A DNA stretch of 25,693 nucleotides, from positions 1 through 25,693 of the forward strand of contig NIVC01005119.1 in the NCBI GenBank assembly GCA_002269645.1, read 5' to 3'. Shown here piece after piece: positions 2,541 through 23,895 of this stretch (position 1 is the stretch's first letter; each line of letters opens with the position of its first letter). The translations under genes were made by a program, and so were the position numbers. This DNA comes from Macrostomum lignano (Eukaryota). The notes under the pieces were generated by a model. It made no database searches, was not told where the DNA came from, and saw only the letters and a list, made by a program, of their open reading frames with translations.

Positions 2541-3111
2541 CAGTAAATCACTTATTGAGTATCGCGTGCTGTGAGTCACAAGTATTGGGCACAGAATGCA
2601 AGAGTTCGAATACAAGTATTACCGGAAAATTGGAGTAGCGCTTAGCTAAGCCTAAAGCAATTATTCTTACATTATACATGTCAGTGGCACTACATCTATA
2701 GCTTAGTCAAATATATTTATTGTTCACTTACATTTGCATATTTTGCATATGTAAATCTTTTGAACTAAATGATTTCAATTGCATAATATACGTGTACAAG
2801 TTTGCCTGCAAAAACTAGTGGAAGCCTAGCTGCTATGGCAACAATTGCGAATATTTGCAAGTTTTCATGTAGCCTAGTAACGTGCGTCCCTTATCTAAAT
2901 GAATACAACTTGCTGCACATTCTACAGTGTATGTTTAACTATAAAGTTCATTCACTGCATGTGTGCATATCAGCTCTGCATTTTATTAGTTCAATTTTGC
3001 GCTCTATCTGCTGGTTTATAGCCTCAATGTGGGCGGGTTATAAACACGATATAAATATATTAGTTTTGCTTTTCAGATCGTTAAAAATAAAAAAGCTTTC
3101 TGTTTTAAAAC

Positions 3112-3472
3112 CAAGAGACAAGGGCGCCCCACCAAAAGACAGGGGCGCCCTCCAAGAGACAGGGGCACCCTCCAAGAGACAGGGGCGTCCACCAAGAGAC
3201 AGGGGCACCCTCCAAGAGACAGGGGCGCCCACCAAGAGACAGGGACACCCTCCAAGAGACAGGGACACCCTCCAAGAGACTGGGGCGCCCACCAAGAGAC
3301 AGGGGCGTCCACCAAGAGACAGGGGCACCCTCCAAGAGACAGAGGTGCCCACCAAGAGACAGGGACACCCTCCAAGAGACAGGGGCACCCTCCAAGAGAC
3401 AGGGGGCGCCCACCAAGAGACAGGGGACGCCATCCAAGAGACATGGGGCGCCAACCAAGAGACAGGGGCGCC
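3112..3472. repeat. Minisatellite, 20-bp unit CCAAGAGACAGGGGC(A/G)CCC(T/A), about 18 copies
   Basis: Directly visible. Explains the four overlapping ORFs at 2802-3500. Confidence 0.97.
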
Positions 3473-4110
3473 CGCTAACACTGAGCTACGGCTCCCTTAG
3501 AGTTATAAACATTCATGGTTGCGTTACTGTATGTCAAGAATCACTAAGCAGTTGAAAATGCGCAGAAGATTCTAGGCAGTGAATAGACCGTAAAAAGCTT
3601 AATAAAGAAAACAACTTCACCGCACAGCGCCACTAAAGTCGTAACAAGAGAAACCTGGCAAAATGCTAAACAAAATTGAGAGAGAGAGAGAGCTCGATTT
3701 CTTTCGCCGAGCTGAAAAAATAGTGCCCGGGTGTATGCATAAACATATACGGTATATGTGGCAAGAAGTGTTTCTTCTTAAAAAGAAAGAATCCACGTGT
3801 GCCGCTATTGCCAAAGGCGCGACTCGCCTCGCGTACTCATTCTGCTTCCAACTAGGCTAGGCTAGAAAATACAGTGAGAGAGAGAGAGGGTGAGAGAGAT
3901 TTAGGTACAGAGTGAAGGCGTATTGCAAACATTCTAGGCTTGAGTATATATGCACACACTGTGTATGCCAAACAGCCATTTCCCTGCTTGTAGTTTTCCT
4001 GCAGCCTGGTAAATTACTTTTGCAACACTATTAAATAATGAAGAAGCAGCATTTGATTTATCGATAGATTGATTGAATCCCAACATCAGTCAGGACGGCA
4101 ACAATAGATC

Positions 4111-4206
4111 ATGCTGAAGTCTGATACTGACAGCTATAATTATTCCACTATTGATGAGTCGATTGCCAGCACCGAGTCCACTCTGCGCTACTGCCTGTGG
4201 AAGAAG
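4111..4206 (+). CDS. Putative first coding exon (MLKSDTDSYNYSTIDESIASTESTLRYCLWKK)
   Basis: ATG at 4111 with an in-frame TAG at 4105. Strong donor AAG|GTGAGC at 4207, phase 0, compatible with exon 2. The peptide has no recognisable homology and an alternative first exon exists at 8045-8059. Confidence 0.55.
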
Positions 4207-4406
4207 GTGAGCCGCGATTGGGCTGGCTGGAGCTGGGGAGAGGGAGCGGAAGAGGGAATAGAGAGAAAGGGGAAGGGAAGAAATGAGAGAGGGGAGGGTA
4301 GAGAGAGAGGGGAGGGTAGAGAGAGAGGGGGAAGGTAGAGAGAGAGGGGAGGGTAGAGAGAGAGGGGAGGGCACAGAGAGAAAGGTGGGAGGGTAGAGAG
4401 GGGAGG

Positions 4407-4482
<76 letters not shown>

Positions 4483-4707
4483 GCGAGGGTAGAGAGAGAG
4501 ATGGGGAGGGAAGAGAGAGATGGGGAGGGAAGAGAGAGATGGGAAGGGAAGAGAGAGGAGGGTAGAGAGAGACGCGAGGGTAGAGAGAGAGGGGAGGGTA
4601 GAGAGAGAGGGGAGGGTAGAGAGAGAGGGGAGGTTAGAGAGAGAGGGGAGGGTAGAGAGAGAGGGGGGAGGGCACAGAGAGAAAGGTGGGAGGGTAGAGA
4701 GGGGAGG

Positions 4708-4755
<48 letters not shown>

Positions 4756-7700: not shown

Positions 7701-10700
7701 GAGTGCCACAAGCCAGAAATAATGAATCGAGGCACAAAAGAAGAGCTAAGGGCAGATTGCGCAGAGTGAATTACCATCGCAAAAACAGTATTTACATGTA
7801 GTTCGCATAAAAAGTTCGTTTTTCAAGAAAAATAAGAAACTTAAAAGTTAGTATTTTCAGTTTGATACATGTAGTTAGGCTGTCAAACTTCTTCTATTAA
7901 CCAGTGAATGATGGCGCACAAACAATTGAGTATTGAAGCAAACTAATATACGCGTAGATCTGTGTGAGGAATGCCTGACACCCTAGCGCGTGCAACAGTT
8001 TTATACTTAGTTCTTTTCTTTCGCAAATCTTTTCATCAAATTAAATGATGCTTCCTAAGGTGAGAAGGTCTTGTACGTGAAAGTGTCCGTTTTGGATAGA
8101 AAAAGCAGATGAATTGCAAAGTTGACTGTGTTTTTCTTTTGCTCTGCGACGTATCTGAACTTATTTAGAGTTCAGTTTAATGGAAGATTTTGTGAGTTTG
8201 TTATATTGTACAAAACTGTTTAAGGTGATTTTTAACTTTTTAAAAACTTTTCTATGCATCGTTTTTTCCGCTTTCTAAACAGGGCACCCAGTTCACGTAC
8301 GACATACCCGATGGACTGATTGAGGGCGACTGCGTTGAGGTGAAAGGTCGACTCACTGGGAAGCGGTAAGAACGTACTGTTTATTAATGTGAAGTAAGAA
8401 ACGGGTAGGTATGATGTAGTCATGGACAGGTAGTCACAGACAGGTAGTTACGGACGGGTAAACACGGACAGGTAGTCACAGACAGGTAGTTACGGACGGG
8501 TAGTCACGGACATGTAGTTAGGGACAGGTAGTTACGGACAGGTAGTCACGGACATGTAGTTATGGACAGGTAGTCACGGACAGGTAGTCACGGACAGGTA
8601 GTTAGGGACAGGTAGTCACGGACATGTAGTTAGGGACAGGTAGTCACGGACAGGTAGTTACGGACGGGTAGTCACGGACAGGTAGTCACAGACACAGACA
8701 GGTAGTTACGGACAGGGTAGTTGTACTGCTTAAGGGGCCCCAATATATGAGCAGATTTATTACATTTACCTTGCGCACTTTGATGGTGTGACTATCATTC
8801 ATCGTTTGCAATTAAATACTAAGGTAAATATCAATCAGTTCACTTAGGAGGGTTTAACTTTCGTCTCAGCACCCTCGGGCCTCTTGCTTTAGTAATTACA
8901 GTAGTCATGCAGAGGTAGTCAGTACAGTTAGGGATAGGCTGTATAGAACAGGACAGGTAGCATAGGCGATACCTTTATGACTGGACAGGTAGGCAAGACA
9001 GGTAGATGTATGGCACAACAATAGGTAAGTGCATGTTTCGCTAGATTCTATAGAAAAAAAGAAATTTAGTCAGTAAGAGAAAAAGGGTCAAAGAATATTT
9101 GTCGAACACTTCAAACCGACTTCTGTAGGCAAATAGTAAATTGTATTGAGAGTCAAACTTGACTGACATGCATGGCTGAAAGAGTCTTTTCGATGCGTTT
9201 TTTATTATTTGACTTCACGATGCTTTGGTATTGCCTAAGCCTGTTTTAAATCCAACAATATTAACAAAAATAGGGTATGCCTGGAGCTCTCGGGAGCGCT
9301 GACAAAAGTACCGAGTACAGCTGCAGCTGACGGCGATGCCGAGAAGGTCGAGGAGCACCGAGTTGTACCGCTGCGACTCAGATTCAGCCGGGGCGGCAGG
9401 TACAAGCTCCACTCGGACTATTTGGGTCGGGAGGCTTCCAGGCGTGGTCGGTTCCGATACGACTTTCAGGCTGACAGTCAGTTCATTGTGCAAATTCGCA
9501 TTCTTCACTTGTACTATGATGTAAGTTGGAACTGTAGTTTCACAACGTTTGGAGTTATAATTGGGGCCTTTATTTGCAATTAGTAAGATTGTGTCAGTCC
9601 AGGGACAAGCTTGTGTCACATGCAGATCGGAGGTTGTGTCAGTCGAGAGACAAGCTTGTGTCACATGCAAATCGGAGGTTGCGTCAGTCCGGAGACAAGC
9701 TTGTGTCAAATACAGATCGGTGGTTGCGTCAGTCCATAGAAACGCTTGTGTCGAATCTCTTATGTCTAAAAACTTTACTCACTTTGATCCTCTCCCATGA
9801 ACTAAACCAGATCCGCATCAACGACATCGAGCTGATCAAACTCGAGCACGGCCAACTGCACAACGAAATTCAGATGCTGTCGCTAGACGGCGATGCCGAA
9901 TTCACCGCCGTTGACTTTATCGACTTGGAAGACCTGGCGGAAGCCACAGGAGGTGGATTAGCAATCAGCTTGCCAATGGGAGATCCTATAGACAACTCCA
10001 GTCCAGCTAGCGAGCCAGGTAAGACGTCTGTGACCTCCGTAGGGAAATCGCCAGACCTTTGACATTGCAACTTGAAGGCAGGAGTCTGACAATATGCACG
10101 GTCATATACTAGCTAATCTGTGGATAGTTCAAATAAATCAGCCTGCAGATTTTCGTGCTATTCCTGCCCATGAAGGCCAACCCATATAAACCCCCAACCC
10201 CCAACCCCCAACCCTCACCCCTAACCCTCAACCCCAACCCCAACTCCCAACCCCGACTCTCACCCCAAACTCTCACCCTATCCCCCACCCCAACCCCCAG
10301 CAATCTATAAAGTGACTACAACACGACTACTAAAATCGATTTATTCGGAAGTTTCGCTTCGTACCTGGTTTTGCACCGTTAAGCACGCATTTGATTTTTG
10401 TACTAATTAATCGCATGCAATTCAGTATAATACATGATTAGTATTCTCGCACCTAGACGTCAAAGCCCCCGGTTATTGCAGAGCTAATAGTACCGAAGAA
10501 GTTCAGAAAGCAAAATGCTCAGCAACCAGTGCTTGACACCATCGACACTGCCGGCACGATGGATTATGCCGATGGGCGAGCGGCACATCAGCAGCAGCGG
10601 ACGAAACGACGGACAGAAGAACCGACCTCCGAGATGCCAGCCGGCGTCAAGGCCAGGAAAACTAAGCTGCCGTCTAGCAGTTCAAAAGAAAACGATGCGC

Positions 10701-13700
10701 ATCCTGAGTTGACGGTCGATTCAGCAGAGCAACGACTGGAATTGAAAGACAGCTCGACAAGCGAGGCCAGACGGTCTCGCGACAGGAGACCGAAAGGACT
10801 GGCAAACAATGACAAGCTGATGGTAGCAGAGTTGCCTATTCAAAGCGACAAGCAGCCAAAGCAAAGTACTGGAGAGCCAAGACGGTCAAAGCGAACATCT
10901 GACCAGCAGCAAACGCTTCAACAAGGCAACAAAGCTGAGCTAGGATTCGACATTAAAGACTCAGAATCTAAACAAGAAAGATCTCAAAGGAAAAAGACAA
11001 CCAAGTCACCCAGGACATCCTCGAAGGCTTCGAATTATTCTACATCGGAAGTCGCAGATCTAGGAGTTATCGAAACTACAGACTACAGTTCAACTAGGGA
11101 TCCAACTCACAGGACAAAGACAGGAAAGTCCCCAAGAGAATTGTCAAAGGCATCAAATTCATCGAATTCTGAAGCTGCAGACTCTATAAACACCGATTCC
11201 AAGCAGCAGAGGAGACAGAGACGCACAGCTGGTTCAAAAGAGCGACAACACAGAGAGCAGCGCCAGCAATCAGACTCACCAGGACTCATGTCAAACCAGA
11301 CGGAAGAAAGGCAGAAAAACCTGTCAGAGGAGGAGTATTGCAAAGTAGAGGCACAACAACCGCAATCGATGCTTCCAATATACCAGCAAACGGATGAGCA
11401 ACACAAAGACGCGGAAACAACTAAAAGAAGAAAATTGGCTCAAGAAGATGAAACTAAAGAGTTGCATCAATCCAGATCTAACAGCCGTCAAAACGGGAGA
11501 CTAGTTCAAATCAGTACTCAAAATCGAAACCCGATGCACGTCGGCCAAGGCAAGAGCAGGACTTTGCGCAAAATGGAAGTCAACCTCGTGCAGAAAGCGT
11601 CACTACCCAAGCGCCTATCTCAAGTGTTCTAGCAGAGCAGCAAGAACTGCAAAATGCAGAGTCTGTTAAAACGAAGGAAATGCAACCGCGCACTCAACAG
11701 CAACAGCCTGATCTTCAAGACAGAAATTTCAGATAGATCACCTTTGCAGCAACCCGTAGAGACTCATTGACAGATCCATCGAAATCGGTATCAAGACCCA
11801 AAAGTCTTGATGTGGAACAAAACAGCAGCAAAGACGCAGCACAACCGGTGATAAAAAAACCAAATTCGTCGAAATCGCAGCCACAAAAACTCGATTCTCC
11901 AAAGACTGGAACGGATCCTCATCATCAGAAGGAGCATTCAGCACCACCTGGCTCTGATCCTGTTGATACCAAGCCTAACAGACAAAAGTTGGACACTTCA
12001 AAAGCTCAAAAGCAGCAAATTCCAGCTGGGTCTTACAGTGTCCCAACTCCAACGTTGCAGCAGCAGCAACAGCGACGACCACAGGGTCAGAGCTCTCTCG
12101 GCCGACCAAGGAGGGGCAGCGGCGCTGGCGAGGCAGAAGTTTTACCCCCCTCGGCGCCCAGCCAACAGCAACAACAACAAAAGCAACCGCACAATGTTCA
12201 GAGTTCTCCGCCTGTAAAATCCGTTCTTCCTAAAGCACCCAATAAACAAAGACTTGGCGAATCTAGGGCCGATACAGCAATTCAATCTCAAGACGCACCG
12301 GCACCGGGCTCTTATAGTTCTCCAAGGGCTCAGCAGCAAAAGCTGAAAAGAGCCGACGTTGAACCTCAGCACGAGTTGGAAATCTCTGGCTCATACAACA
12401 TCGAGGCGCAGCAGTCTGCAGTCAAGCAGAAGTCTCACCAACAAAGACTTGGTGAGGATTTAAGGCAGCAGGGAGCGAAATCCTCTAGCAGGCGACGCGG
12501 TTCTGCTGGAGAAAAAAAAGCGTCTGCATGTAAGTTGCGGGATGGCCCGAACGAATTTTTTTAATGCCCTTCAATAGTAAGAGATTTAGCGGCATCTAAA
12601 TATACCAAAGACAAAAAGGTATTAATTTCATTGTTTTTCAACGAACTTCACTACAAACGTATAAAAGGCACAATGATTATAATCGTTGCAATACTAATCA
12701 CAATCCCCCAGCACTGCACGAATAGTTACAGCTCCACCAGTTGAGCAATAATCTAAAATTAATTATATTATATAGTTACTAACCAAAAGTGCACTGTAGA
12801 GTCTAATATAGCTCTTACTACACTTGTTATTATACTACGGAAAAACTGAAAACGAAAAGCATAGGAGAGGTCAAATTAAACTCTCATCAATTGAGCTTGC
12901 TCAATGAGCCAGTGGTTAGAGATTTTTTAATGTACTGAACGACAATAAAGGCTTGACTGGGTATGAAGAGTCTAGTCAGGTAAAAATTATTGTAGATAAC
13001 AAGGCTGAAATGACAGGATTTTGTACATACGAGCGTACATGCTTATATTTGTACATAAATCTGCCTTGCTCTTGCTCTTAACCAATCAGAGAGCCCTCTG
13101 AGAGACATCTTGCTTACTGATATTGTCATTGCAGTTAGTTCTGAGCCAGAACGGCTTGTTAAAGACTTGTTAAAAATGTTGTAACGCCATTAAACTCTTA
13201 GATCATTGAACCAAATTTTCAGTGGACGGAGTTTATCGAGTTGTCCCAGTAACTCCAGTTGTCTCAGCGCTTCCAGTAGCCAATCAACAACAGCAACAGC
13301 AAATTCTGTTGAAGCAGAAGCAGCTCAAACAGCAGAGCCAACAGCGTCAGGAGAGCGCAGGCGAAATGTCTGACTCACTGTGGAAAAGCCAACACATAGA
13401 CGAAGACAATCTTGTCAGTCTCACCGATTCGCAACTCGATTCAGCTGACTGCCCGTCAGCCGCGGCAGACCAAGATGTTGCTCCTAAAAGCAACAGAAGC
13501 AGCAGCAGAAAGAGCAGCAGCGGTCTGTCCTCCGTGGCCGAGGCGAACGCCGACGCAGCAGGACCTTGCAGTGCCGCAGACCTCACCCAGCAGTACATGT
13601 ACTACGCTGCGGATGAATCTTCAACATCACCCAGTGCTCCAGCTGCCGCTGCTGCTGCTGCTGCTGCAGTTTCATCGCCAATAGAAGTGGCCAGAGACGC

Positions 13701-16700
13701 CAGCGAATTCTTTGTTGAGCCTCAGCCCCAGCATCAGCTGATGCAGCAGCAGCCATCGTCGCTAGATGCTGTTAAACGACTCGACATAAGCGGCCCGTGG
13801 AGTATTCAAGAGCGTCGAAAGGTTCCGCCCAGTAACGACACCTTTGACGAAGACGGTAGCAGTCAGACTGCAGCCGACCAGGCGTTCCGGCATTCCGCCA
13901 CGCCGTCGGAGCTGCTGTACGCGGAGAGCAAAGTGTACGACACCATCACTGTTGAGGTGAGGAAGTGCTTCTTGAAAGCTTGCTGTAGTTTTTTAATTTA
14001 GCTAATATGCTTAAATGCTTAGCTTATATACTATATTATAGCAAAACTTAAAAACCATTTTTTTAATCTTTTCACTCACGGCTTTGGTATTGTTCAAGTG
14101 AGTTCTTCTCAAATCTAATCAAATCAAATCATACTACTTTACCATCATGTTGGCTAACAAACGGTACAGTGGCTTTTAGTTATAGTGCTGATTCGCTTCC
14201 TTGTAGTCAATCGGATACTTGAAAAACTGGCCATGAAAGTATTTCTCCCAGTCGATGAATAGCTATCTACTGTGAAAAATTTTGGCTGCGGTCGATTTTC
14301 TTTTAAAAAGTCGCGTTTTAGGACCTACAGTATTCGTTGTGATTCTTGGGCTAGAGCCAAATGAGACATAAGCTTGGATAAGGTGGTGGGTGTAACTGTG
14401 TTTACATTCTAATGGCTTGAATTTGTACATGCAGATTAGGTAAATTCTAAAGTTAATCTGAGAATTGTCATAGAATTAATCTTTTTTACAATTAAACGTT
14501 TATTTTTCACGAATTTATTTTAAAAAACTTTAATAACAATTTAAAGTAAAAGTTTAACCAAATTTATAAAATAGCAGAGAGAAAAAATAGCTTTGCTAAA
14601 CAGAGTCTCAAAAATGAACTTGCCTACATGTGAGTCAATTGTTATTCTTGTTCTGATTTTTCCAGTTGTATTCTAAAATTAAAACGTATTAGAGAAACGA
14701 CAGAAAAAGTGCAAAGAGATAAATAGAACTTGCTTAACATTGCATTTTCCATACAGTTCAGTTTATAGCATATTTTACAGCTTAAGCATTGGCACCAGAT
14801 ACTTGAACTCGCCGTGAACCCAAAGCATGAATCAAATCCGGCGACTGCCAAGCGCTGTATCCTCGGCTAGTAAAAAATTCGATAATTGTTGCATTATCCA
14901 ATCCCGACATGTGCTGCGGCATCCACTCCATCTGCACTACGGCGACCTTTGGACCTTATGGGCGAATAAGTCACCAGATGTGCGCAGAAAGTCTGCCTCA
15001 CCGCCTTCAACATCCAGCTTCATAACGATATTCTGCGTGCTGATGATGACTGAGCCCAGTTTCTCCGTTCTAACTGGCATAACGGGTATCGAGTCGCGCA
15101 AATCTTGGCCGAATTTCGTCGCTCCACCGACGTTGCAGTCGCCGGGAAAGTTCAAGTAGGCCAGCTGATTGTCGAACGATATCCAGAATATTTTTGTCAA
15201 ATGGGTGGAACAGCTTGCATAGCGGATAGCCGTCCAACGTTTTCTCGTAAGCTCTGACATTGCTGCATAGCGCGTCTCGATAGCTCGGGTGCAGAAATTT
15301 GATCTCACGCAACACTTCGTAGAGTTTGCATCGCTTCTCTTCAGATTCAAAGCCGAAATAAATGTTGATTAGATATACAGCAAAGATTAAACAGGCGGGG
15401 AAAAAATGCCGCAACTTGAATTCCAATCAATAGACTATTCAGCCAAGACTAGGGTAGAAAAATCAGCAAAACTACACATTTAAATACAGTTTGGACTGTT
15501 TTTAGACTGAAAGCACACTGGTCCCCGTACCAGAGGGATGGATAGCGCGAACAGTATAACAAACGCGCTTTTTCCTAGCCCCAGTCAGTTCAAACTTAGA
15601 AGCTGATCTGTCTCCTCATTCGTCTAGCTTTTTGTTAACAGCTTATCCAGTCTGGTTTGAGCCAATAACTAAACTAGTTCTCCGATAGCTTGAAATTATC
15701 TAAGCGGACGAAGTGTCTGAACTCATGAAATTGGACGACGAAGACTACACCATCAGACTTTTAGAGGTTAATGAAACCTAAAAAAGACTCAATCATGGAG
15801 TGGGTGTGGCGTGCGTGAACTAATTAAAAACGCTTAGGGCATTACTTCATCGGTATTTTTTGCTTTTTAATGTAACTTTAAAAACATCGCCGCGCTAAAT
15901 GTCGTAGCAATTTGGTAACTTCTGCTAAATAACCACCACAACGCGCCTTTAAAACCCAATCTTAAGCCAACACCGGCAAAAGTGAGTCGGCTGCAGGCAA
16001 CCAGTGTAACTACGAGTACAAATCAGCCTCAGACATCTACTCCGACAAACCAAGACGATTACAACCTCGAAGTCGCGACCGCAGCCGCAGTTGCAGCCTC
16101 TGCTTCATCTGCTGTTGAACGCAACGAAAGCCAACGATCAGCTTTATCTGACGAAACAACTTCTTTAGAGCTACCGCGCAAAAAGTCCCAATCGGCAGAG
16201 CAGCAACAGCAGCAACAGCATCATCATCAGCAGCAGCATCTGCATCTGTTCTGCCGGTCGCAGAGTTACAGTCTAGAGCACGCTCAACGCAAAGTACGCG
16301 GTAGCGGCGCCTACCCCGAGGCAATGAGCGACGGAATCTATCGACCATTGACTCAATCGAATGAAAGTCTGTCTCTACCAGCGGCGCTTCCCGTAGAACC
16401 GGGGTCGAAAACTCCGAAGACTCCGTCGCTTAGGTCAGTTGAGACTGGCGGTAGAGCAGAAAGCCGTACTACGGACCAGATGGCGACCGTAGCCCGAGCG
16501 GAGTCTGCAACTTCTGCGACGTCTAAAAAGAGTAAAAGCAAAAGTGTCGAGCATCTAGACGGAGCCAGCGATACTGACAGCGTCTGGATGGCCGATTTCA
16601 GCTTCCACGATCGACTGGCTCGGTCGAGCTCGTCGGTGTCGCAGCGTCAGGCAGCTCCATCATCTGCCGATCGTCGACGTCAACAGGCACGAAGAGATTT

Positions 16701-19700
16701 GAACGACAACGGCGGGTTTATCTTGACTGCTCAACTACCGACGACAGTTCAGCAAGCGAACAGCAGCAGCGAGCTCGTAACCGTCTCTGACCTGCTGGAG
16801 ACCGCCAGCTTGGCCAGCGACGCTCGAATTCGTGACCCGGAGCTCTGCAGCTTTCGCAGATCCATTCAAGAGGATCTTCTGGCACGTCGACAACCGAGCA
16901 ACGCTGGCGCTTATCTCCGATCCTATCGGGCCACAGTCGAGCCGGACAACCATTCGTCATTTTTTCATGTCCGCTCCACGCCAATTGACGACAAAAACGA
17001 CAGTACGCAGACAACTGATGACGACGACGCAAGCTCGGTGTCATCTTCGGAGTCGGGTCTGTCAACGGATTCGTCGTTGGCGGCAGCGCTGCAGGCTATG
17101 GAGATAGTGGGGGAATCAGATAGTCTGTCGGAAGAGCAGAAGCTGAGGCGGTCGAGAAGGCGGCTGCGACGGCTGCGGCGACAGCGTCGAAACTCATTGA
17201 GGCGACGGAAGCAGCTCGCGGCCGCCGCTGCCGTCGCTGCTGCGGTGGTAATTGAAATTTTATCCGAAATCTTTTACACCGAATGTTCTATTTTTTACCG
17301 GATTTTGTTTTATCGCATGCTGAAGTTAATTCGATGTCTTAACAAACGGTTAGATTCGATTCGATTTTACGTAATTGCATGCTTTATATTGTATAGTAAC
17401 AGTTCGGCTTGCAACATAAAGATAATTCAGTTGTCTATATGTTTTTACTTAGAGTAGGCACGTAAGTAACTGAAGCAAATGCACATAAAAATACAATTAT
17501 TTTATTGCACATGACGCTTGTTTTTAAAAAAAAATTATTATGCTTTGTTATAATCTAGTGCTATTGACGTAACACGCTACTGCATGATGAGCAAACGGAT
17601 AAATGTAGATTTTTTCAGTAAAAATTTTATTACTAATTGCTTCATTCCCACAGTCCGAGCCAGAACCATTCGTTGCTCACCTACCGGAGCCCCTGCGCAG
17701 CGGCCGAAGGATAATTGTGAGCGGGCAGTTCAGCGAGAGCACGAAACGGTATGAGGAACCGGAAATGATTCACTACGATTTGGAATCAATCAATGATGAC
17801 ACCATCATTCTAAATACTCTATTTATTCTAGATACCCTAGTCATTCTATTAATAAATACCCCATTCATTATAAATACCCGAGTAATTCTAAATACCCCAG
17901 TCATTCAAAATACCCCAATCATTCTAAATACCCCAGTCATTCTAAATACCCAGTCATTCAAACTACCCCAGTCATTCTAAATACCCCAGTCATTCAAAAT
18001 ACCCCAGTCATTCTAAATACCCCAGTCATTTAAAATACCCCAGTCATTCAAAATACCCCAGTCATTCTAAATACCCCAGTCATTCTAAATTCCCCAGTCA
18101 TTCTAAATACTCCAGTCATTCTAAGTACCCCAGTCATTCTAAATTCCCCAGTCATTCTAAATACCCCAGTCATTCTAAATACCCCAGTCATTCTAAATAC
18201 CCCAGTCATTTAAAATACCCCAGTAATTCAAAATACCCCAGTCATTCTAAATACCCCAGTCATTTAAAATACCCCAGTCATTCAAAATACCCCAGTCATT
18301 CTAAATACCCCAGTCATTCTAAATTCCCCAGTCATTCTAAATACTCCAGTCATTCTAAGTACCCCAGTCATTCTAAATTCCCCAGTCATTCTAAATACCC
18401 CAGTCATTCTAAATACCCCAGTCATTTAAAATACCCCAGTAATTCAAAATACCCCAGTCATTCTAAATACTCCAGTCATTCTAAATTCCCCAGTCATTCT
18501 AAATACCCCAGTCATTCTAAACCCCATTAATTTTAAATATCCTATTCATTCGTAACACTCCAGTTATACTAAACATTTCATTCATTCTAAACACTCCATT
18601 CATTCTAAACAATCCATTCATTCTAAACACTCCAGTCATTCTAAATACATCTGTCATTCTAAATACCCCAATAATTTTAAATTCCCCATTCATTCTAAAT
18701 ACACCTCAGTCATTCTAAATACCCCAGTCATTATAAATAGCTCAGTCATTCTACATACCCATTAATTCTAAATACCTTAGGTTTGTCAATGATTTTGCAA
18801 ATTCAAATGCAGTATCTTCCAGTTACAATCGAATTAGTAATTTCTTCGTTATCTTTTAAATCCCCCAGAGCCACTCTGTCACTTAGAAACAGCAAACGCA
18901 GCGGCATCAGTGCCTCTACAGACAACGCCAAGACTAGGAAAGCAGCAGCAGATGTTGAAGAAGAGTTTCTGGTACAGCTGAAGCAACTGGATGAAGAGGG
19001 CGGCGCCACTGAGCTGACTTGTCGGCAGTACAACGGTCGCGAGTGGACCAGCGAGCAGCGCTCGATGACTCGAGCTTTGAAACCGAATAAAACTGGAAGT
19101 TTTTGCGTCGAGATTCACACATCATCTGTGGCTTTCACCGTGAGTTCACGTTTGCGGTTTCCTTTTTTTCATTGTTTGTTGTGTTTAGCAACGCGTAGAA
19201 ACTCTAGCAAAATGCACTGATTGGTTTTCGTCAGCGATAGTGCTTGGTTTCCGTGTCTAGAAGTAGTTGGTTTCCATGTCTAGAAGTGGTGGTTGGTTTC
19301 CGTGTCTAGAAGTGGTGGTTGGTTTCCGTGTCTAGAAGTGGTTGGTTTTTTGTGTCTAGATGTAGCTGGTTTCCATGTCTAGAAGTGGTGGTTTCCATGT
19401 CTAGAATTGGTGATTGGTTTCCGTAGCTTGAAGTGGTTGGTTTCCATAGATTGAAGTGGTTCGTTTCCGTAGATTGAAGTGGTTGGTTTCCGTAGATTGA
19501 AGTGGTTGGTTTCCGTGTCTAGATTTAGTTAGTTTCCATGTCTATATGTAGTTGGTTTCCATGTCTAGAAGTAGCTGGTTTCCGTGTCTAGAAGTGGTGG
19601 TTTCCATGTCTAGAAGTGGTGATTGGTTTCCGTAGCTTGAAGTGGTTGGTTTCTATAGATTGAAGTGGTTGGTTTCCGTAGATTGAAGTGGTTGGTTTCC

Positions 19701-22700
19701 GTAGCTAGAAGTTGTTGGTTTCCGTAGCTAGAAGTAGTTGGTTTCCGTAGCTAGAAGTGGTTAACTTCCGTGTCTAGAAATGGCTGGTTTCCATAACTAG
19801 AAGAGAAAGCAGATGTTGGTTTCTGTCACGTGAATTGATCGGCTTCTTTTTCCAGAACTGCAGTCCTTTTTTAAAGTATTCGCTTACCGCATATCAAATT
19901 GGCAGCTTCGAAAGCTTTCCAAACTTACCGAAAGAGCAGAAAACCATTGAAATAAGAGAAAAACGGTCTTAACCATAATCTCTGTGTTTGCAAAGCACCT
20001 GACTTACTGATTGCGACCCAATGCATTACCAACCCGCAGGTTCGCTTTGAAGATGCAGTTTGCGTCCAGCCGCACACGATCCCGTTCTCGAATTTCACTC
20101 ACCTGGTATTGGACGGCAGCTCCGAGTACCAGAGCATCGAATTCCCAGATGAACTCGAGCTGCCATACAGCGAGGAATTTCCGCAGTCGCTGGATTTGGT
20201 TAGTCACATCCTCATCAAATTGCAACTGTTGAAATCTGCCGGCGCGACTAGCGGCAAGAGAGCTTCAACGACCGTCCCAGGTAGTCAGTCACCCATAGCG
20301 TTCGGCTTGGACCACGGTGCGGCCATGCTGTGTCTGATGGATCCAGTGAAACAAACGGTGTCTGTAGGACGCACAGTTCCAGAGACCGGTGGCTTTCTGT
20401 GCGAAACGAAGGTTGACCGCGTGCCGGATTTGGCTAAACTAAGCAGTGTACTGCTCAGGATGGAGACAGACTCGGTGCTGGTAAGTGGGGCTGCAATCTT
20501 GAGAGTATGATAGATACTTTAGAATGAGATTCTTGATGGAGTGGATTGAAAAATAAATAAAAGTGGATTGATGTGGTTGGATGGAGTAGATTAAGGTAGT
20601 TTGATGGAGTAGATTGGGATGGTTGGATGGAGTAGATAGGGTTGGTTGGACAGAGTAGATTGAGATGGTTGGATGGAGTAGATTGAGATGGTTGGATAGA
20701 GTAGATTGGGATGGTTGGATGGAGTAGATTGGGATGGTTGGATGGAGTAGATTGGGATGGTTGGATGGAGTAGGTTGGGGTGGTTGGATGGAGTAGATTG
20801 AGATGGTTGGGTGGAGTAGGTTGGGGTGGTTGGATGGACTAGATTGAAGAGTTAAAATAAAATGAAATGAGCGAATGATGCGGCTACGATTGGAATTCAA
20901 GTTGTCAGAAATCGCCTCGCACAAAAATGCTCCCCAAACTTCACCAGATTCTGCTGGACGGCAAACCGGTCTTATCATACAACCTGTTAACGCGAAAGCA
21001 CTACATCACCAGCTTCTTTATCGACGGCAATTTTCTGCTAAAAGACGTCGTCTGGAAAGAGAAACGAGCGCCAAAATGGACGCCACTGCCGCCAAGTTTT
21101 CAAGTTGGTCGGAGCATCCGCGTCTCTGGTCTGCTTCCGGAAGACGGACGAAGCGTCTGCTGCGTGGCCCTCACAGTTGACGCCGCAGGAGCCCCCGAGT
21201 CGTCCAACGCCGCGTTCTGCCTGCGCTGCGAGCCGGGCCGTCAGCCGAGCGTCACCTCTTCGGCTCCGTCGGCCTCGTCAGCAACGATGCAACGCCCGCC
21301 GCTGCTACCGGGCCAGCGCTTCGAAGCGCACATCCTCTGCAAGCTGACTGGGTTCGAGGTGATGCTAGGCGATCTTGAAGCCGGCGTCTGCCAGGTGCCC
21401 CACGGTGTCGATCCGAGACAGTTGCGGTCGGTTCGACTCACTGGCGGAGCCGTATTCTACGAGGTTGACTTCCCTGACCAGCTGGGGCTGCCGTATTTGA
21501 ATCGATTTCCAGTCAGCCTGAAGGAATCTCGATTTGTCACCGTGGACGTGGAATGCGGACTGCACGCCTCCAGGCCCAATACGTGAGTGCCAGTTCTGCA
21601 GCTGTCTCTTTTAACGTTTGGGTCGATCATAATTCTTCAAATTTCAATGAGAACTAAACCATCTGTTCAATTGAGAATCACGACTTTCACTAATCTATTG
21701 CAAAGATTCTACTCTAAGATTAAGATCTTATTGAGAATCGCCCTTCTGCCTCCTACGTAGACCCAGTAGACGTTCTTCGACCTGGTAGAAAATCAGCCAT
21801 AAATTCCACATAGAGAATTACATCTTAAACCACGCTACAAACTACCCTTCAAAGATGCACCCAAATGCGAATTAAGGACACATGAAATTCTATAACTTTT
21901 CAGCTATAGTATTTCTACTATTAGTAGCAAATTCAGAAAACGTACACTTTTTGTCTTCCAAAACAGAATCAGCTTCGCTCTGTGCACCGGGCCAGGCGAT
22001 GCCTGCCTGAAGCCGCTGGTCTGCGAGTTCAACATGGCCCAAGGCTACGCCTCAATGGCCTGGTCCAACCCGGCTGGCGAGCTCTGCGATGAGGATACGA
22101 AAAAGTTCGATCCCAGACTGGCCGGAGAAGTTGAAACTGTGGCCTTGCAAGCGACGGATTCGGACTACATTGTAAGTTTGAAGCAGTGCGGATCTTTGAA
22201 TACCAGCTTAAAGGGCCTTGCAAACATCAGAACCTTGAAAACGTCAGCACCCTCGCTACACAAAAACCTTGACAACTTAGGACATTGAGAACCCAGAAAA
22301 TTGACAAACCCAGAATCTTGACAATTCTAAGATCCTTGGAATCCTTGGAAGGACCTTGACAATCCAGGATCCAGGACCTTGATAATCCAGGAACCAGGAC
22401 AATCCAAGACCTTGACAATCCAGGACCTTAACAATCCAGGACCTTGACAATCCAGGACCTTGACAATCTAGGGCCTTAACAATCCAGGACCTTGACAATC
22501 TAGGGCCTTAACAATCCAGGAACCAGGACAATCCAAGACCTTGACAATCCAGGACCTTAACAATCCAGGACCTTGACAATCCAGGACCTTGACAATCTAG
22601 GGCCTTAACAATCCAGGACCTTGACAATCCACGACCTTGACAATCCAGGACCTTGACAATCCACGACCTTGACAATCCACGACCTTGACAATCCACGACC

Positions 22701-23895
22701 TTGACAATCCACGACCTTGACAATCCAGGACCTTGACAATCCACGACCTTGACAATCCAGGACCTTGACAATCCAGTATCCAGGACCTTGATAATCCAGT
22801 ATCCAGGACCTTGACAATCCACGACCTTGACAATCAAGCACCTTGACAATCCACGACCTTGATAATCCAGGACCTTGACAATCCACGACCTTGACAATCC
22901 ACGACCTTGACAATCCACGACCTTGACAATCCACGAACTTGACAATCCAGGACCTTGACAATCCAGGACCTTGACAATCCAGGACCTTGACAATCCAGGA
23001 CCTTGACAATCCACGACCTTGACAATCCAGGACCTTGACAATCCACGACCTTGACAATCCAGGACCTTGATAATCCACGACCTTGACAATCCACGACCTT
23101 GACAATCCACGACCTTGACAATCCACGACCTTGACAATCCAGGACCTTGATAATCCACGACCTTGACAATCCACGACCTTGACAATCCACGACCTTGACA
23201 ATCCAGGACCTTGACAATCCACGACCTTGACAATCCAGGACTTTGACAATCGAGGATATTGACATCCCAGGACCTTGACAAACCCAGTAGACTTGGGAGA
23301 AGTCAAAGTCTCGACCAAGAATCTATTGCAAATTTTGACTTTCCTATTTAATTTTTTCTAAATCCCATTCCATTTCGTCTATTTAGCTGTCAGTGAATGA
23401 GACGGCGGTGCTTAAATACCCGGTTCGACACAGTCTCGATGAAATTCAGTACGTCTTAATAGACGGCGACGTCTGCATCACCAGCGTGCAATTTGAAGGC
23501 AAGGTGAGAGCATCGTACGCAGGTGTTGTGTAGGCCAATTAAGAAACCTTCACCTCAAATTCTATAATTTCTACAACCCCACAGCCCCCATATTCTACAA
23601 CCCCACTCCTCACAGCCCCCCTCCCATATCCTACAACCCCACTCCCCACAGCCCCTATATTCTACAAACCCACTCCCCACAGCCCCCATATTCTACAACC
23701 CCACTCCCCACAGCCCCCATATTCTACAACCCCACTCCCCCCACCACGCCATATTCTACAACCCGTCTGCCGTCTCTCACATTTAACAACTTATACGAGC
23801 TAAAAATAGCCATGCAGCCCTCTCAGCCAGAAATGATGCTCTAGATAATTTTGCAAACATTTCAGGCTGCCACTCCGAGCTGCTGCATCAACTAA
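4111..23895 (+). CDS. Giant multi-exon galectin-like protein (1+4 galectin-fold domains, long disordered linker, about 2,160 aa)
   Basis: Manual splice reconstruction: 4111-4206, 8283-8365, 9274-9520, 9811-10018, 10482-12529, 13223-13956, ~15967-17247, 17654-17748, 18869-19139, 20040-20480, 20948-21582, 21967-22171, 23387-23503, 23866-23895. All introns are GT-AG and phases match at every junction. Total 6491 nt, 1 nt short of a codon multiple, matching the frame change inside exon 5. Five segments show galectin strand patterns (P-F/Y-x3-hydrophobic-P start, F-x-V/I-x-I strand, L-x-I/L-D-G-D end). Confidence 0.85.
4240..4915. repeat. Polypurine GA-rich tract with pure (GA)n runs and GGGGAGGGTAGAGAGA-type subrepeats (intron 1)
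   Basis: Almost only G and A on the + strand. Pure (GA)n runs at about 4407-4480 and about 4710-4752. Confidence 0.97.
5701..7658. repeat. Minisatellite, 23-25 bp unit CTCTGTCTAACAGTCC(T/C)GACACC, about 80-85 copies (intron 1)
   Basis: Directly visible and highly homogeneous, with a few interspersed variants (CCCCGTGTC, GACGCC, CTAAAAG). Confidence 0.98.
8283..8365 (+). CDS. Exon 2: start of galectin-like domain 1 (GTQFTYDIPDGLIEGDCVEVKGRLTGKR)
   Basis: Acceptor tttctaaacag| and donor CG|GTAAGA, phase 2. Resembles the galectin N-terminal strands (F-x3-IP-x-GL-x2-G-x3-V-x-G). Too short for the ORF track. Confidence 0.85.
8423..8722. repeat. Minisatellite, 14-bp unit GGACAGGTAGT(C/T)AC, about 21 copies (intron 2), with degenerate echoes near 8950-9030
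   Basis: Directly visible. Confidence 0.95.
9274..9520 (+). CDS. Exon 3: middle of galectin-like domain 1 (VCLELSG...FQADSQFIVQIRILHLYYD)
   Basis: Acceptor aacaaaaatag| (phase 2) and donor GAT|GTAAGT (phase 0). Open frame containing the galectin-like FQ-x3-F-x-V-x-I strand. Confidence 0.85.
9589..9753. repeat. 45-bp tandem repeat, about 3.7 copies (intron 3)
   Basis: TTGTGTCAGTCCAGGGACAAGCTTGTGTCACATGCAGATCGGAGG and variants starting at 9589, 9634, 9679 and 9724. Confidence 0.92.
9811..10018 (+). CDS. Exon 4: end of galectin-like domain 1 (IRINDIELIKLEH...EIQMLSLDGDAEFTAVDF) and start of linker
   Basis: Acceptor actaaaccag| and donor CAG|GTAAGA (phase 1). Matches the galectin C-terminal pattern V/I-x-V/I-N...H...I-x2-L-x-I/L-D-G-D. 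Lies within track ORF 9574-10062. Confidence 0.88.
10189..10299. repeat. Degenerate (CCCCAA/CCCTAA/CCCTCA)n telomere-like tract (intron 4)
   Basis: C-run hexamers, only one of them an exact CCCTAA. Confidence 0.85.
10482..12529 (+). CDS. Exon 5: large Q/S/K-rich disordered exon, interrupted by a frame change and an in-frame stop
   Basis: Acceptor ttattgcag| (phase 1) and donor AT|GTAAGT at 12530 (phase 1). Covers track ORFs 10529-11632 and 11767-12564, which are in different frames. The second frame is open from 11482 to a TAG at 11734 and resumes after it. Confidence 0.7.
13223..13956 (+). CDS. Exon 6: polyQ/polyA/Ser-rich linker exon
   Basis: Acceptor aaattttcag| (phase 1) and donor GAG|GTGAGG (phase 0). 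Lies within track ORF 13222-14001. Confidence 0.85.
14782..15427 (-). pseudogene. Nested antisense FkbM-family (Methyltransf_21-like) methyltransferase, disrupted
   Basis: Minus-strand motifs: hydrophobic N-terminus (HFFPACLIFAVYLINIYFG), ISFDNQLAYLNFPGDCNVGG, IVMKLDVEGGEADFL (14997-15020 for KLDVEGGE), then in another frame VAVVQMEW...IIEFFTSRGY. The start reads ATTGGAA rather than ATGGAA. Frame changes at about 15180 and about 14950. No D-x-G-A-N-x-G motif in any frame. Confidence 0.72.
15967..17247 (+). CDS. Exon 7: Ser/Ala/Gln-rich linker exon ending in an Arg-rich block
   Basis: Open frame from 15919 (track ORF 15982-17457). The acceptor is uncertain: aatcttaag| at 15966 is the first phase-0 AG, and ctgcag| slightly downstream is an alternative. 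Donor GTG|GTAATT at 17248 (or 17245), phase 0, after which the sequence becomes AT-rich. Confidence 0.75.
17654..17748 (+). CDS. Exon 8: start of galectin-like domain 2 (SEPEPFVAHLPEPLRSGRRIIVSGQFSESTKR)
   Basis: Acceptor ttcccacag| and donor CG|GTATGA (phase 2). Clear galectin first-strand pattern PF-x3-LP-x2-L-x2-G-x2-I-x-V-x-G. Confidence 0.88.
17800..18780. repeat. Minisatellite, 18-bp unit TCATTCTAAATACCCCAG, about 50 copies, homogeneous core at about 17885-18520 with degenerate edges (intron 8)
   Basis: Directly visible. Confidence 0.97.
18869..19139 (+). CDS. Exon 9: middle of galectin-like domain 2, with WTSEQR motif
   Basis: Acceptor aaatcccccag| (phase 2) and donor ACC|GTGAGT (phase 0). 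YNGREWTSEQR matches the galectin W-x2-E-x-R motif. Confidence 0.88.
19244..19800. repeat. Minisatellite, about 22-26 bp unit (GGT)TGGTTTCCGTGTCTAGAAGT, about 23 copies (intron 9)
   Basis: Directly visible, with two sub-variants (GTGTCTAGAAG and GTAGATTGAAG/GTAGCTAGAAG). Confidence 0.95.
20040..20480 (+). CDS. Exon 10: end of domain 2 (FTHLVLDGSSEYQSIEF) and most of domain 3
   Basis: Acceptor aacccgcag| and donor CTG|GTAAGT. 441 nt, phase 0/0, open frame. Confidence 0.85.
20545..20850. repeat. Minisatellite, 23-bp unit GATGGAGTAGATTGGGATGGTTG, about 12 copies (intron 10)
   Basis: Directly visible. Explains minus-strand ORF 20439-20978. Confidence 0.95.
20948..21582 (+). CDS. Exon 11: end of domain 3, all of domain 4, start of domain 5
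   Basis: Acceptor acttcaccag| and donor AC|GTGAGT (phase 2). Segments ILLDGKPVLSY...TSFFIDGNFLL, PLPPSFQVGRSIRVSG, PLLPGQRFEAHI and LRSVRLTGG are galectin-like. Lies within track ORF 20927-21586. Confidence 0.88.
21967..22171 (+). CDS. Exon 12: middle of galectin-like domain 5 (ISFALCTGPG...TVALQATDSDYI)
   Basis: Acceptor cttccaaaacag| (phase 2) and donor ATT|GTAAGT (phase 0). Open frame. Confidence 0.82.
22240..23290. repeat. Minisatellite, 16-bp unit CCTTGACAATCCA(G/C)GA, more than 60 copies (intron 12)
   Basis: Directly visible. Explains the minus-strand SRSWIVKVLDCQG ORFs. Confidence 0.98.
23387..23503 (+). CDS. Exon 13: end of domain 5 (LSVNETAVLKYPVRHSLDEIQYVLIDGDVCITSVQFEGK)
   Basis: Acceptor gtctatttag| and donor AAG|GTGAGA. 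Very galectin-like end (V-N...I-x2-V-x-I-D-G-D-V-x-I-x-S-V). Without splicing, the frame reads on to a TAG at 23531-23533. Confidence 0.88.
23570..23765. repeat. Minisatellite, about 31-bp unit TCTACAACCCCACTCCCCACAGCCCCCATAT, about 6 copies (intron 13)
   Basis: Directly visible. Confidence 0.93.
23866..23895 (+). CDS. Putative terminal exon 14 (AATPSCCIN*)
   Basis: Consensus-like acceptor catttcag|G at 23865, phase 0, then TAA at 23893-23895 followed by AT-rich UTR-like sequence. The exon is short, so it is less certain. Confidence 0.6.
   Translation, partial: AATPSCCIN

What the first reader, a model, noticed from the sequence alone, without database searches (positions are those of the whole stretch)
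4111..23895. Giant five-domain galectin-like protein with a 1 + long linker + 4 architecture
Seen: a phase-consistent 14-exon model giving about 2,160 aa, with galectin-like domains at 8283-9918, 17654-20144, 20145-21055, 21056-21472 and 21473-23494. Domains 1 and 2 are separated by roughly 1,350 aa of low-complexity sequence. Established: described galectins have one domain (proto and chimera types), two (tandem-repeat type) or, in some molluscs, four. Inference: five domains plus a huge disordered insert is an architecture I do not recognise and may be an undescribed scaffold family. The ORF track hides it because many domain exons are short.
Basis: partly seen in the sequence, partly recalled or inferred. 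Interest (0 to 1): 0.85.

Follow-up and report, generated by a model that had tools for sequence, protein, structure and literature searches.

The report
Flatworm five-domain galectin-like protein gene
The window holds a real Macrostomum lignano (flatworm) gene for a very large protein with one galectin-fold domain, a disordered tether of about 1,350 residues and four more galectin-fold domains. The gene is already in public databases as an uncharacterised prediction, it has lost the usual sugar-binding residues, and its reading frame is interrupted in this particular contig.

Summary
All five domains have a galectin fold. D1, D2, D4 and D5 pass Pfam PF00337's curated cut-off. D3 is shown by profile comparison and by an AlphaFold model whose top 50 PDB matches are all galectins.

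The window is the whole contig NIVC01005119.1 of M. lignano assembly Mlig_3_7. GenBank annotates only the 3' 1,121 aa (PAA46014.1), so the exons for D1 are unannotated here.

One gene with a 1 + linker + 4 layout is supported in three ways:
- a 1,755-aa uninterrupted ORF in a sister copy;
- GenBank PAA47915.1;
- UniProt A0A1I8GA91, which already carries all five domains.

In this contig the 2-kb linker exon carries a 1-nt deletion (11479) and a scrambled patch with a stop codon (11704-11759). As assembled, the ORF therefore splits into two parts. This could be an assembly error or a damaged copy.

Exon 8 (427 aa) is skipped in the annotated isoforms.

No domain keeps the His-Asn-Arg sugar-binding triad. 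There is no signal peptide. I infer that the protein is a sugar-blind multivalent scaffold.

Five domains is not exceptional: predicted fish and snail proteins carry 13 to 26 galectin domains. I rate this a new variant of a known kind, of moderate interest.

The parts
4111..4206 (+). Exon 1: ATG start, 32 codons (MLKSDTDSYNYSTIDESIASTESTLRYCLWKK), donor GTGAGC
   Evidence: An in-frame TAG lies at 4105-4107, just upstream of the ATG. Paralogue P0004 reads ...KYCLWKK|GTQFTYDIPDGL across the same junction. All 3 substitutions against sister copy L003 are at third codon positions and synonymous.
8283..8365 (+). Exon 2: start of galectin-like domain 1 (D1 spans 8283-9918 across exons 2-4)
   Evidence: 100% match to UniProt A0A1I8IFC8 (P0003). 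AG/GT sites, phase 2. Spliced D1 scores 28.8 bits on PF00337 over profile positions 1-131.
9274..9520 (+). Exon 3: middle of D1
   Evidence: tblastn with P0003; splice sites.
9811..10018 (+). Exon 4: end of D1 (to 9918) and start of the linker
   Evidence: tblastn with P0003 and P0004; phase 1 junction confirmed by the P0003 sequence ...PASEP|ELIVPKK.
10482..12529 (+). Long linker exon. It is one continuous exon in sister copies, but its ORF is interrupted in this window.
   Evidence: Continuous ORF in L003 and L001 and in PAA47915.1 and A0A1I8GA91. In the window the frame changes at 11479, with stops at 11630 (original frame) and 11734 (shifted frame).
11479..11479 (+). Site of the window-specific 1-nt deletion (TCTAACAG here; TCTAAACAG in L003; TCTGAACAG in L001)
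   Evidence: Pairwise alignments; the site lies in a short A run.
11704..11759 (+). Rearranged patch with several small indels relative to both sister copies; contains TAG at 11734-11736
   Evidence: The GenBank CDS bridges 11705-11742 with a 38-nt gap that begins AG and ends CC, so it is not a canonical intron.
13223..13956 (+). Exon 7: linker
   Evidence: Present in PAA46014.1, PAA52624.1 and PAA47915.1. Identical in L001 and L003. AG/GT sites.
15967..17247 (+). Exon 8: probable cassette exon, 427 codons of linker, containing the Arg-rich cluster KLRRSRRRLRRLRRQRRN. The acceptor could instead be at 15997.
   Evidence: Open frame with AG/GT sites. It is skipped in every annotated isoform. Two collinear short motifs, LF.RS.SYSLE and HSSFF, recur upstream of D2 in paralogue P0001 (first motif E 0.004, second alone not significant), and a KSYSLE motif recurs in P0007. 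There are no indels and 22 substitutions against L001.
17654..17748 (+). Exon 9: start of galectin-like domain 2 (D2 spans 17654-20144 across exons 9-11)
   Evidence: tblastn with P0001. Spliced D2 scores 30.1 bits on PF00337.
18869..19139 (+). Exon 10: middle of D2, including the only retained Trp..Glu.Arg motif (REWTSEQR)
20040..20480 (+). Exon 11: end of D2 (to 20144) and first two thirds of D3 (D3 spans 20145-21055)
   Evidence: 57% identity to P0001; D3 fold evidence.
20948..21582 (+). Exon 12: end of D3, all of D4 (21056-21472) and start of D5 (from 21473)
   Evidence: D4 scores 25.8 bits on PF00337 from a single exon. Synonymous to non-synonymous changes against L001 are 7:1.
21967..22171 (+). 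Exon 13: middle of D5
   Evidence: tblastn with P0001 and P0002; splice sites.
23387..23503 (+). Exon 14: end of D5 (...VCITSVQFEGK), donor GTGAGA
   Evidence: PF00337 profile positions 98-132, 19.4 bits; D5 as a whole 24.8 bits.
23866..23895 (+). Exon 15: Cys-containing C-terminal tail AATPSCCIN plus the TAA stop
   Evidence: It matches the C-termini of P0002, P0092 and P0093. The annotated gene ends at 23895.

Best explanation
Shown:
- The window is contig NIVC01005119.1 of the Macrostomum lignano Mlig_3_7 assembly.
- It carries gene Mlig013397.g2, one of three copies about 99% identical to one another in this partly duplicated genome.
- The gene has 14 exons spread over about 19.8 kb.
- The protein runs as follows: a 32-aa N-terminus, galectin-fold domain D1, a serine-, glutamine-, alanine- and arginine-rich low-complexity linker, four contiguous galectin-fold domains D2-D5 (597 aa), and a short Cys-containing tail.
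- The linker is about 920 aa without exon 8 and about 1,350 aa with it.
- The protein has no signal peptide and no transmembrane segment.
- None of the five domains keeps the His-Asn-Arg residues of the canonical galactoside site. Only D2 keeps the Trp-Glu-Arg residues.
- In this contig the long linker exon has a 1-nt deletion and a rearranged patch with a stop codon. As assembled, it therefore encodes a 594-aa D1 fragment and, separately, the annotated 1,121-aa 3' protein. A sister copy gives one uninterrupted 1,755-aa ORF.

Inferred:
- The break is more likely an assembly error than biology. Each sister contig has its own single-base indels in homopolymer runs. In addition, an independent assembly of one copy lacks the indels seen in Mlig_3_7.
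- The four-domain module probably arose by duplication of a two-domain unit, because D2 resembles D4 and D3 resembles D5. It is collinear with the four-CRD galectins of other spiralians.
- Functionally, I think the protein is most likely a leaderless, largely sugar-blind, multivalent adaptor. It would use degenerate galectin folds as protein-binding or atypical-ligand-binding modules. A long flexible tether would separate the two binding ends, and its length and charge would be tuned by inclusion of exon 8.
For: Identity and locus:
- Exons are 100% identical to M. lignano proteins.
- The contig length of PAA46014.1's record equals the window length, and the gene range is 11654-23895.

Fold:
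- Pfam scores.
- PDB sequence matches to galectins.
- hhalign for D3.
- AlphaFold model of the four-domain module, pLDDT 74; Foldseek top matches are the tandem-repeat galectins 4hl0, galectin-8 and galectin-9, E about 1e-12.
- Model of D3 alone and its PDB matches.

One gene:
- L003 gives a 1,755-aa ORF with all GT-AG sites.
- PAA47915.1 runs in one ORF from mid-D1 to the stop codon.
- A0A1I8GA91 carries D1 to D5.
- The 275-codon ORF at 11737-12561 contains no Met, so it cannot start a protein.
- Paralogue fragments P0004 (D1 plus the start of a linker) and P0001 (the end of a linker plus four domains) show the same two ends.

Coding constraint:
- Synonymous to non-synonymous changes are 7:1 in exon 12 and 3:0 in exon 1.

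Lesions:
-; homopolymer contexts.
- P0121, predicted from the ML2 assembly, has D1 intact. The Mlig_3_7 contig of the same copy has two 1-nt deletions in D1.
- The assembly is PacBio/Canu polished with Pilon and holds 180 Mb of blocks at least 95% identical (PMC5730564).

Loss of sugar-binding residues:
- Domain alignment with human galectin-1, human galectin-3 and the Patella four-CRD galectin.

No leader or membrane segment, and linker composition:
-.

Domain-type relationships:
-.
Against: - No transcript reads were examined. Transcript support comes only through GenBank and UniProt gene models.
- The GenBank CDS on this very contig is only the 3' part.
- The rearranged patch at 11704-11759 is more complex than a typical homopolymer error, so this copy may really be damaged.
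- Exon 8 is absent from every annotated isoform. Its substitutions against L001 are 7 synonymous to 13 non-synonymous, which shows weak or no constraint.
- The scaffold function is inferred only from missing residues and the lack of a leader. Some galectins with altered sites still bind glycans. D2 keeps half of the site.
- The human galectin sequences used as references came from my memory. Only the C-terminal half of galectin-3 was cross-checked.
Confidence: 0.55

Rival explanations
1. In this particular copy the frameshift and stop codon are real. The locus then yields two products: a 594-aa protein with D1 plus a truncated tail, and a protein of 1,121 aa (1,548 aa with exon 8) with the four-domain module, starting at Met 11654. 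Alternatively, the copy is a decaying redundant duplicate in a recently polyploid genome.
For: - The window as assembled has the 1-nt deletion, TAG at 11630 and TAG at 11734.
- GenBank annotates only 11654-23895 on this contig.
- The patch at 11704-11759 differs from both sister copies by several indels and substitutions.
- The genome carries redundant copies that are free to decay (PMC5730564).
Against: - Every other exon is intact. Exons 7, 9 and 10-15 are identical to L003, with no decay elsewhere.
- Each contig carries different single-base indels in homopolymer runs, which is typical of long-read assembly errors.
- One such pair of indels is absent from an independent assembly of the same copy.
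Confidence: 0.3
2. It is a working multivalent lectin. Like the four-CRD galectins of molluscs, it would be exported without a leader and would cross-link glycans on cells or microbes. The five domains would bind galactosides or other sugars through modified sites.
For: - The galectin fold is present throughout.
- The module aligns collinearly with the 559-aa Patella four-CRD galectin, E 4e-7.
- D2 keeps Trp, Glu and Arg of strand 6.
- Galectins in general lack signal peptides (PMC8878817).
Against: - The His, Asn and Arg residues of the HFNPR motif and the Asn of strand 5 are replaced in all five domains and in all three paralogue lineages. All four Patella CRDs keep them.
- A 1,350-aa charged disordered insert has no counterpart in the secreted galectins I compared.
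Confidence: 0.2
3. The five-domain model is a chimera. On this view D1 belongs to an independent upstream gene that gene predictors fused with the downstream four-domain gene.
For: - The old UniProt models split the locus into separate fragments (P0003 and P0002).
- About 7% of M. lignano transcriptional units are polycistronic precursors (PMC5730564).
Against: - The linker exon runs directly from the exon 4 junction into 2.1 kb of open frame in two sister copies.
- Two independent annotations on two assemblies join the halves.
- The downstream ORF has no Met for 275 codons.
Confidence: 0.04

Closest known systems
Four-CRD (quadruple-domain) tandem-repeat galectins of Lophotrochozoa, for example the scallop and oyster galectins cited in PMC8878817; compared here with Patella XP_050404820.1 / KAK6181409.1 (559 aa)
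   Same: Both have four consecutive galectin domains with short connectors, about 560-600 aa in total, and no signal peptide. They align collinearly over the whole module (E 4e-7).
   Different: - Identity is only about 19-20%.
- The flatworm domains have lost the HFNPR / N / W-E-R residues that all four Patella CRDs keep.
- The flatworm protein adds a fifth domain and a linker of 920-1,350 aa at the N-terminus.
- Orthology of individual domains was not resolved.
Two-CRD tandem-repeat galectins (Toxascaris leonina galectin 4hl0, human galectin-8 and galectin-9)
   Same: They are the best structural matches to the module (Foldseek E about 1e-12) and the best PDB sequence matches to D2. The D2/D4 and D3/D5 similarity suggests that a two-domain unit was duplicated.
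   Different: They have two domains, are about 280-320 aa long and bind sugars. They have no long disordered region.
Galectin-related proteins without lactose binding (chicken galectin-related protein 5it6, GRIFIN 5nld)
   Same: They have a galectin fold with a degenerate sugar site, and they appear among the structural matches to D3. This is the closest analogy for how the domains may work.
   Different: They are single-domain small proteins of vertebrates. No specific sequence relationship to them was shown.
Predicted poly-galectin giants of teleosts and a snail (Anguilla XP_035239585.1, Conger KAJ8256622.1, Bulinus KAH9489413.1)
   Same: They are very large proteins built from many PF00337 domains. 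They were recovered as homologues of the module.
   Different: They carry 13 to 26 well-conserved domains packed head to tail. Identity to the module is 21-26%. They do not have the 1 + long linker + 4 layout. All are uncharacterised predictions.

Membership tests
Galectin family (PF00337 fold) | Galectin-type beta-sandwich domain detectable by sequence or structure | tested here: met
   D1 28.8, D2 30.1, D4 25.8 and D5 24.8 bits against a cut-off of 22.1. D3: hhalign probability 85%, E 6e-6. Foldseek top 50 matches to D3 are all galectins.
Galectin family (functional definition) | Conserved sugar-contact residues: His-x-Asn-x-Arg (strand 4), Asn (strand 5), Trp-x-x-Glu-x-Arg (strand 6) | tested here: not met
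   In the alignment with human galectin-1, human galectin-3 and four Patella CRDs, the strand 4 triad and the strand 5 Asn are absent from all five domains in all paralogues. Only D2 keeps W..E.R.
Galectin family (functional definition) | Affinity for beta-galactosides | not testable with these tools
   This needs recombinant protein tested on lactose columns or glycan arrays.
Galectin family | No classical signal peptide or transmembrane segment | tested here: met
   The N-terminus MLKSDTDSYNYSTIDES... is polar. The highest 19-residue Kyte-Doolittle mean is 1.28, in a poly-Ala run. This is a crude test; no dedicated predictor was available.
Lophotrochozoan four-CRD tandem-repeat galectins | Four contiguous CRDs in about 550-600 aa | tested here: met
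   The D2-D5 module is 597 aa. It aligns in one stretch, query positions 3-544, with positions 7-550 of the 559-aa Patella protein.
Lophotrochozoan four-CRD tandem-repeat galectins | Common descent of the four-domain arrangement (domain-by-domain orthology) | tested here: inconclusive
   Profile scores between domain types are low, from 0 to 43 bits. They mainly show D2~D4 and D3~D5 similarity within the flatworm.
Single-gene 1 + linker + 4 architecture (this Macrostomum family) | D1 and D2-D5 encoded in one uninterrupted ORF | tested here: inconclusive
   Met in sister copy L003 (1,755 aa), in PAA47915.1 and in A0A1I8GA91. Not met in the window as assembled, because of the frameshift at 11479 and the stops at 11630 and 11734.

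The most novel reading that the evidence does not exclude
Macrostomum flatworms have evolved a lineage-specific family (three paralogue lineages) of leaderless, sugar-blind penta-galectin-fold proteins. A galectin domain and a duplicated tandem-repeat module sit at the two ends of an intrinsically disordered tether of about 1,000 aa or more. An Arg-rich cassette exon switches the tether's length and charge. On this reading the galectin fold has been repurposed as an intracellular protein-protein or condensate scaffold.
Probability: 0.3. Interest if true: 0.5.

Novelty: new variant of a known kind. Interest (0 to 1): 0.35.

Why it matters
If the protein really is a sugar-blind intracellular scaffold, it would be a clear example of the galectin fold being reused for binding something other than glycans in a multidomain setting. 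It would also extend the range of spiralian galectin architectures (2, 3 or 4 CRDs in the literature) to a platyhelminth with a 1+4 layout.

There are two practical points:
- The GenBank annotation of this contig misses the first five exons and about 600 codons.
- Single-base indels in Mlig_3_7 contigs can split real genes.

The finding does not touch a long-standing open question. Much larger poly-galectin predictions already sit in the databases.

Tried and rejected
- Pfam on raw reading frames of 8001-10102, with stops masked, gave no galectin hit because the D1 exons are too short.
- A homologue search with the exon 5/6/7 linker sequence found nothing, so no predicted protein could be recruited that way to bridge the break.
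- Encoding-contig look-ups for the UniRef-only proteins P0001, P0002 and P0003 found nothing on record.
- I searched for an intron that could skip the frameshift and stop codon. 47 GT-AG pairs preserve the frame, but none has a GTRAG-type donor, unlike most of the other introns of the gene. I rejected this in favour of a single exon after seeing the sister copies.
- My first synonymous/non-synonymous count for exon 8 was misanchored and is void. I redid it.
- Literature and supplement searches for Mlig013397 or Mlig025793, and for galectins with five CRDs, returned nothing. I therefore have no expression or tissue data.
- I considered a concanavalin-like, LamG or neurexin-LNS fold. Those appear only as weaker whole-chain Foldseek matches, below the galectins.


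Full report
**What the window is.** The DNA looks eukaryotic, with split reading frames and many minisatellites. Candidate exons are 100% identical to Macrostomum lignano proteins. The window length, 25,693 nt, equals the length of contig NIVC01005119.1 of assembly GCA_002269645.1 (Mlig_3_7). The only gene called on that contig is PAA46014.1, locus tag BOX15_Mlig013397g2, 1,121 aa, spanning 11654-23895. UniProt names it 'Galectin domain-containing protein'.

**Checking the observation.** I rebuilt the gene model from splice sites, guided by paralogues and by database models of the same locus.
- The exons are 4111-4206, 8283-8365, 9274-9520, 9811-10018, 10482-12529, 13223-13956, 15967-17247, 17654-17748, 18869-19139, 20040-20480, 20948-21582, 21967-22171, 23387-23503 and 23866-23895.
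- All junctions are GT-AG and the phases are compatible.
- Exon 1 might look speculative, but the evidence supports it. An in-frame stop codon sits directly before the ATG. A paralogue reads KYCLWKK|GTQFTYDIPDGL across the same junction. The three differences from a sister copy are all synonymous.

**Are the domains galectin-like?**
- After splicing, D1, D2, D4 and D5 score 28.8, 30.1, 25.8 and 24.8 bits on Pfam PF00337, whose curated cut-off is 22.1. D5 matches only the C-terminal part of the profile.
- D4 lies in a single exon and already scored 25.8 bits unspliced.
- D3 has no Pfam match. A three-sequence D3 profile aligns with a profile of ten canonical CRDs over 129 columns (hhalign probability 85%, E 6e-6).
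- An AlphaFold model of D3 alone (pLDDT 80, pTM 0.75) has only galectins among its top 50 PDB matches (TM about 0.6-0.7).
- The model of the whole D2-D5 module (pLDDT 74, pTM 0.57, all beta) is closest to the tandem-repeat galectins Toxascaris 4hl0, galectin-8 and galectin-9, at E about 1e-12.
- The linker has no Pfam family. It is 1,350 aa long, 14% Ser, 10% Gln, 10% Ala and 8% Arg, with only 17.6% hydrophobic residues and a net charge of +21.

- An exhaustive profile search with the paralogue module, followed by cluster look-ups, recovered three relevant entries:
  - PAA52624.1, gene g1, on a 139-kb contig;
  - PAA47915.1, Mlig025793.g1, a partial protein of 1,637 aa;
  - UniProt A0A1I8GA91, 1,456 aa.
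- PAA47915.1 runs in one ORF from the middle of D1 through the linker to the stop codon. A0A1I8GA91 contains D1 through D5.
- I fetched both sister loci and aligned them with the window. They are about 99% identical to the window in the exons and non-repetitive introns. In both, 10482-12529 is one continuous open exon.
- Applying my exon model to L003, without exon 8, gives an uninterrupted 1,755-aa ORF from ATG to TAA.
- The window differs in two ways. It lacks one base at 11479. It also has a rearranged patch at 11704-11759. As a result, the original frame stops at TAG 11630 and the shifted frame stops at TAG 11734.
- No consensus donor site exists to splice around this break.
- As assembled, the contig therefore encodes a 594-aa D1 fragment and the annotated 3' protein. 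The GenBank CDS even uses a 38-nt non-canonical gap (11705-11742) to keep its frame.

**Is the break real?** I lean towards an assembly error, for these reasons.
- Each contig has its own single-base indels in short homopolymer runs: L001 at 9332 and 9390, and L003 at 16314.
- The two L001 deletions are absent from the ML2-based model of the same copy.
- The assembly is PacBio/Canu polished with Pilon and is highly redundant (PMC5730564).

The rearranged patch is more complex than a typical homopolymer error. I therefore keep a 30% rival in which this copy is truly broken.

**Exon 8.** The annotated isoforms join exon 7 directly to exon 9. Exon 8 nevertheless looks like a real exon.
- It is a 427-codon open frame with AG/GT sites that are conserved in L003.
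- It has no indels against L001.
- It carries two collinear short motifs, LF.RS.SYSLE and HSSFF, which recur just upstream of D2 in paralogue P0001 (first motif E 0.004, second alone not significant). A KSYSLE motif also recurs in P0007.

I therefore treat exon 8 as a probable cassette exon. Its substitutions are not biased towards synonymous changes (7:13), as is common for disordered sequence.

**What it probably does.** The evidence here is indirect.
- I aligned all domains with human galectin-1, human galectin-3 and the four CRDs of a Patella galectin. The His, Asn and Arg residues of HFNPR and the strand 5 Asn are replaced in every domain and in every paralogue lineage. Only D2 retains Trp..Glu.Arg.
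- There is no signal peptide and no membrane segment.
- Profile scores between domain types show that each of D1-D5 is a conserved, distinct type across the three paralogue lineages. The weak cross-similarities are D1~D2, D2~D4 and D3~D5. This pattern fits duplication of a two-domain unit followed by addition of a D2-like domain.
- The module aligns collinearly with the 559-aa four-CRD galectin of Patella (E 4e-7).

My best reading is a leaderless multivalent adaptor with two ends. Its degenerate galectin folds would bind proteins or atypical ligands, and a long flexible tether would hold the ends apart. The rival reading, a genuine cross-linking lectin like the mollusc four-CRD galectins, is less likely because of the lost residues.

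**Comparison with what is known, and novelty.**
- The literature I could search describes lophotrochozoan galectins with two or four CRDs, rarely three (PMC8878817). It contains nothing on this gene or on five-CRD galectins.
- The databases already hold this protein as an uncharacterised prediction.
- They also hold far larger poly-galectin predictions, with 21, 26 and 13 PF00337 domains in Anguilla, Conger and Bulinus.
- At high identity and full coverage, the four-domain module occurs only in Macrostomum, in three paralogue lineages at 100%, 57% and 30-34% identity.
- I rate the finding a new variant of a known kind. It is a real gene, carefully read by the first stage and of moderate interest, but it is not an unrecognised class.

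Noticed in passing
window 3-1035, 2057-2552, 3111-3473, 4259-4911, 5700-7659, 8416-8694, 9589-9752, 17805-18776, 19239-19803, 20574-20846, 22369-23281, 23577-23764: Most introns of the gene, and the upstream flank, hold a different minisatellite with a period of 14-48 nt. The largest is a 1.96-kb array of a 23-nt unit in intron 1 (about 85 copies). A GA-rich tract starts about 50 nt after the exon 1 donor. These arrays create the long spurious ORFs seen on both strands. Their copy number differs between the sister contigs.
   Followed up: partly
L001 19373-27176 and L003 27788-32285: In both sister contigs a gene for a MACPF-domain protein (769 aa, PF01823) lies about 2-5 kb downstream on the same strand. 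The window ends about 1.8 kb after the stop codon, before that gene would appear.
   Followed up: no
window 23866-23892 (C-terminal tail): All three paralogue lineages end with a short Cys-containing tail after the last domain: AATPSCCIN, TALLFSTCN and ...FCGICCQMIQNRAKQLD. This could be a lipidation (palmitoylation or prenylation-like) site or a disulfide site. None of the tails is a textbook CaaX box.
   Followed up: no
window 17683-17748, 20035-20133, 21012-21095, 21961-22005: UniProt A0A1I8FR69, named 'Ig-like domain-containing protein' (515 aa), is a frame-scrambled gene model of this same locus. Several of its segments are translations of the wrong frame of real exons, so its name is an artefact.
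   Followed up: yes
window 13957-15966 (intron 7), around 15420: This intron holds minus-strand ORFs of 118-137 codons (14937-15350 and 15070-15426). The L001 copy has about 190 nt of extra sequence near 15420. This may be a transposon remnant. I did not examine it.
   Followed up: no
L001 (window-equivalent 9332 and 9390); L003 (window-equivalent 16314): The sister contigs each carry single-base deletions in G or C runs inside coding exons. These would frameshift D1 in L001 and exon 8 in L003. The L001 pair is absent from the ML2-based protein of the same copy. This suggests that residual indel errors in Mlig_3_7 split or truncate gene models.
   Followed up: partly
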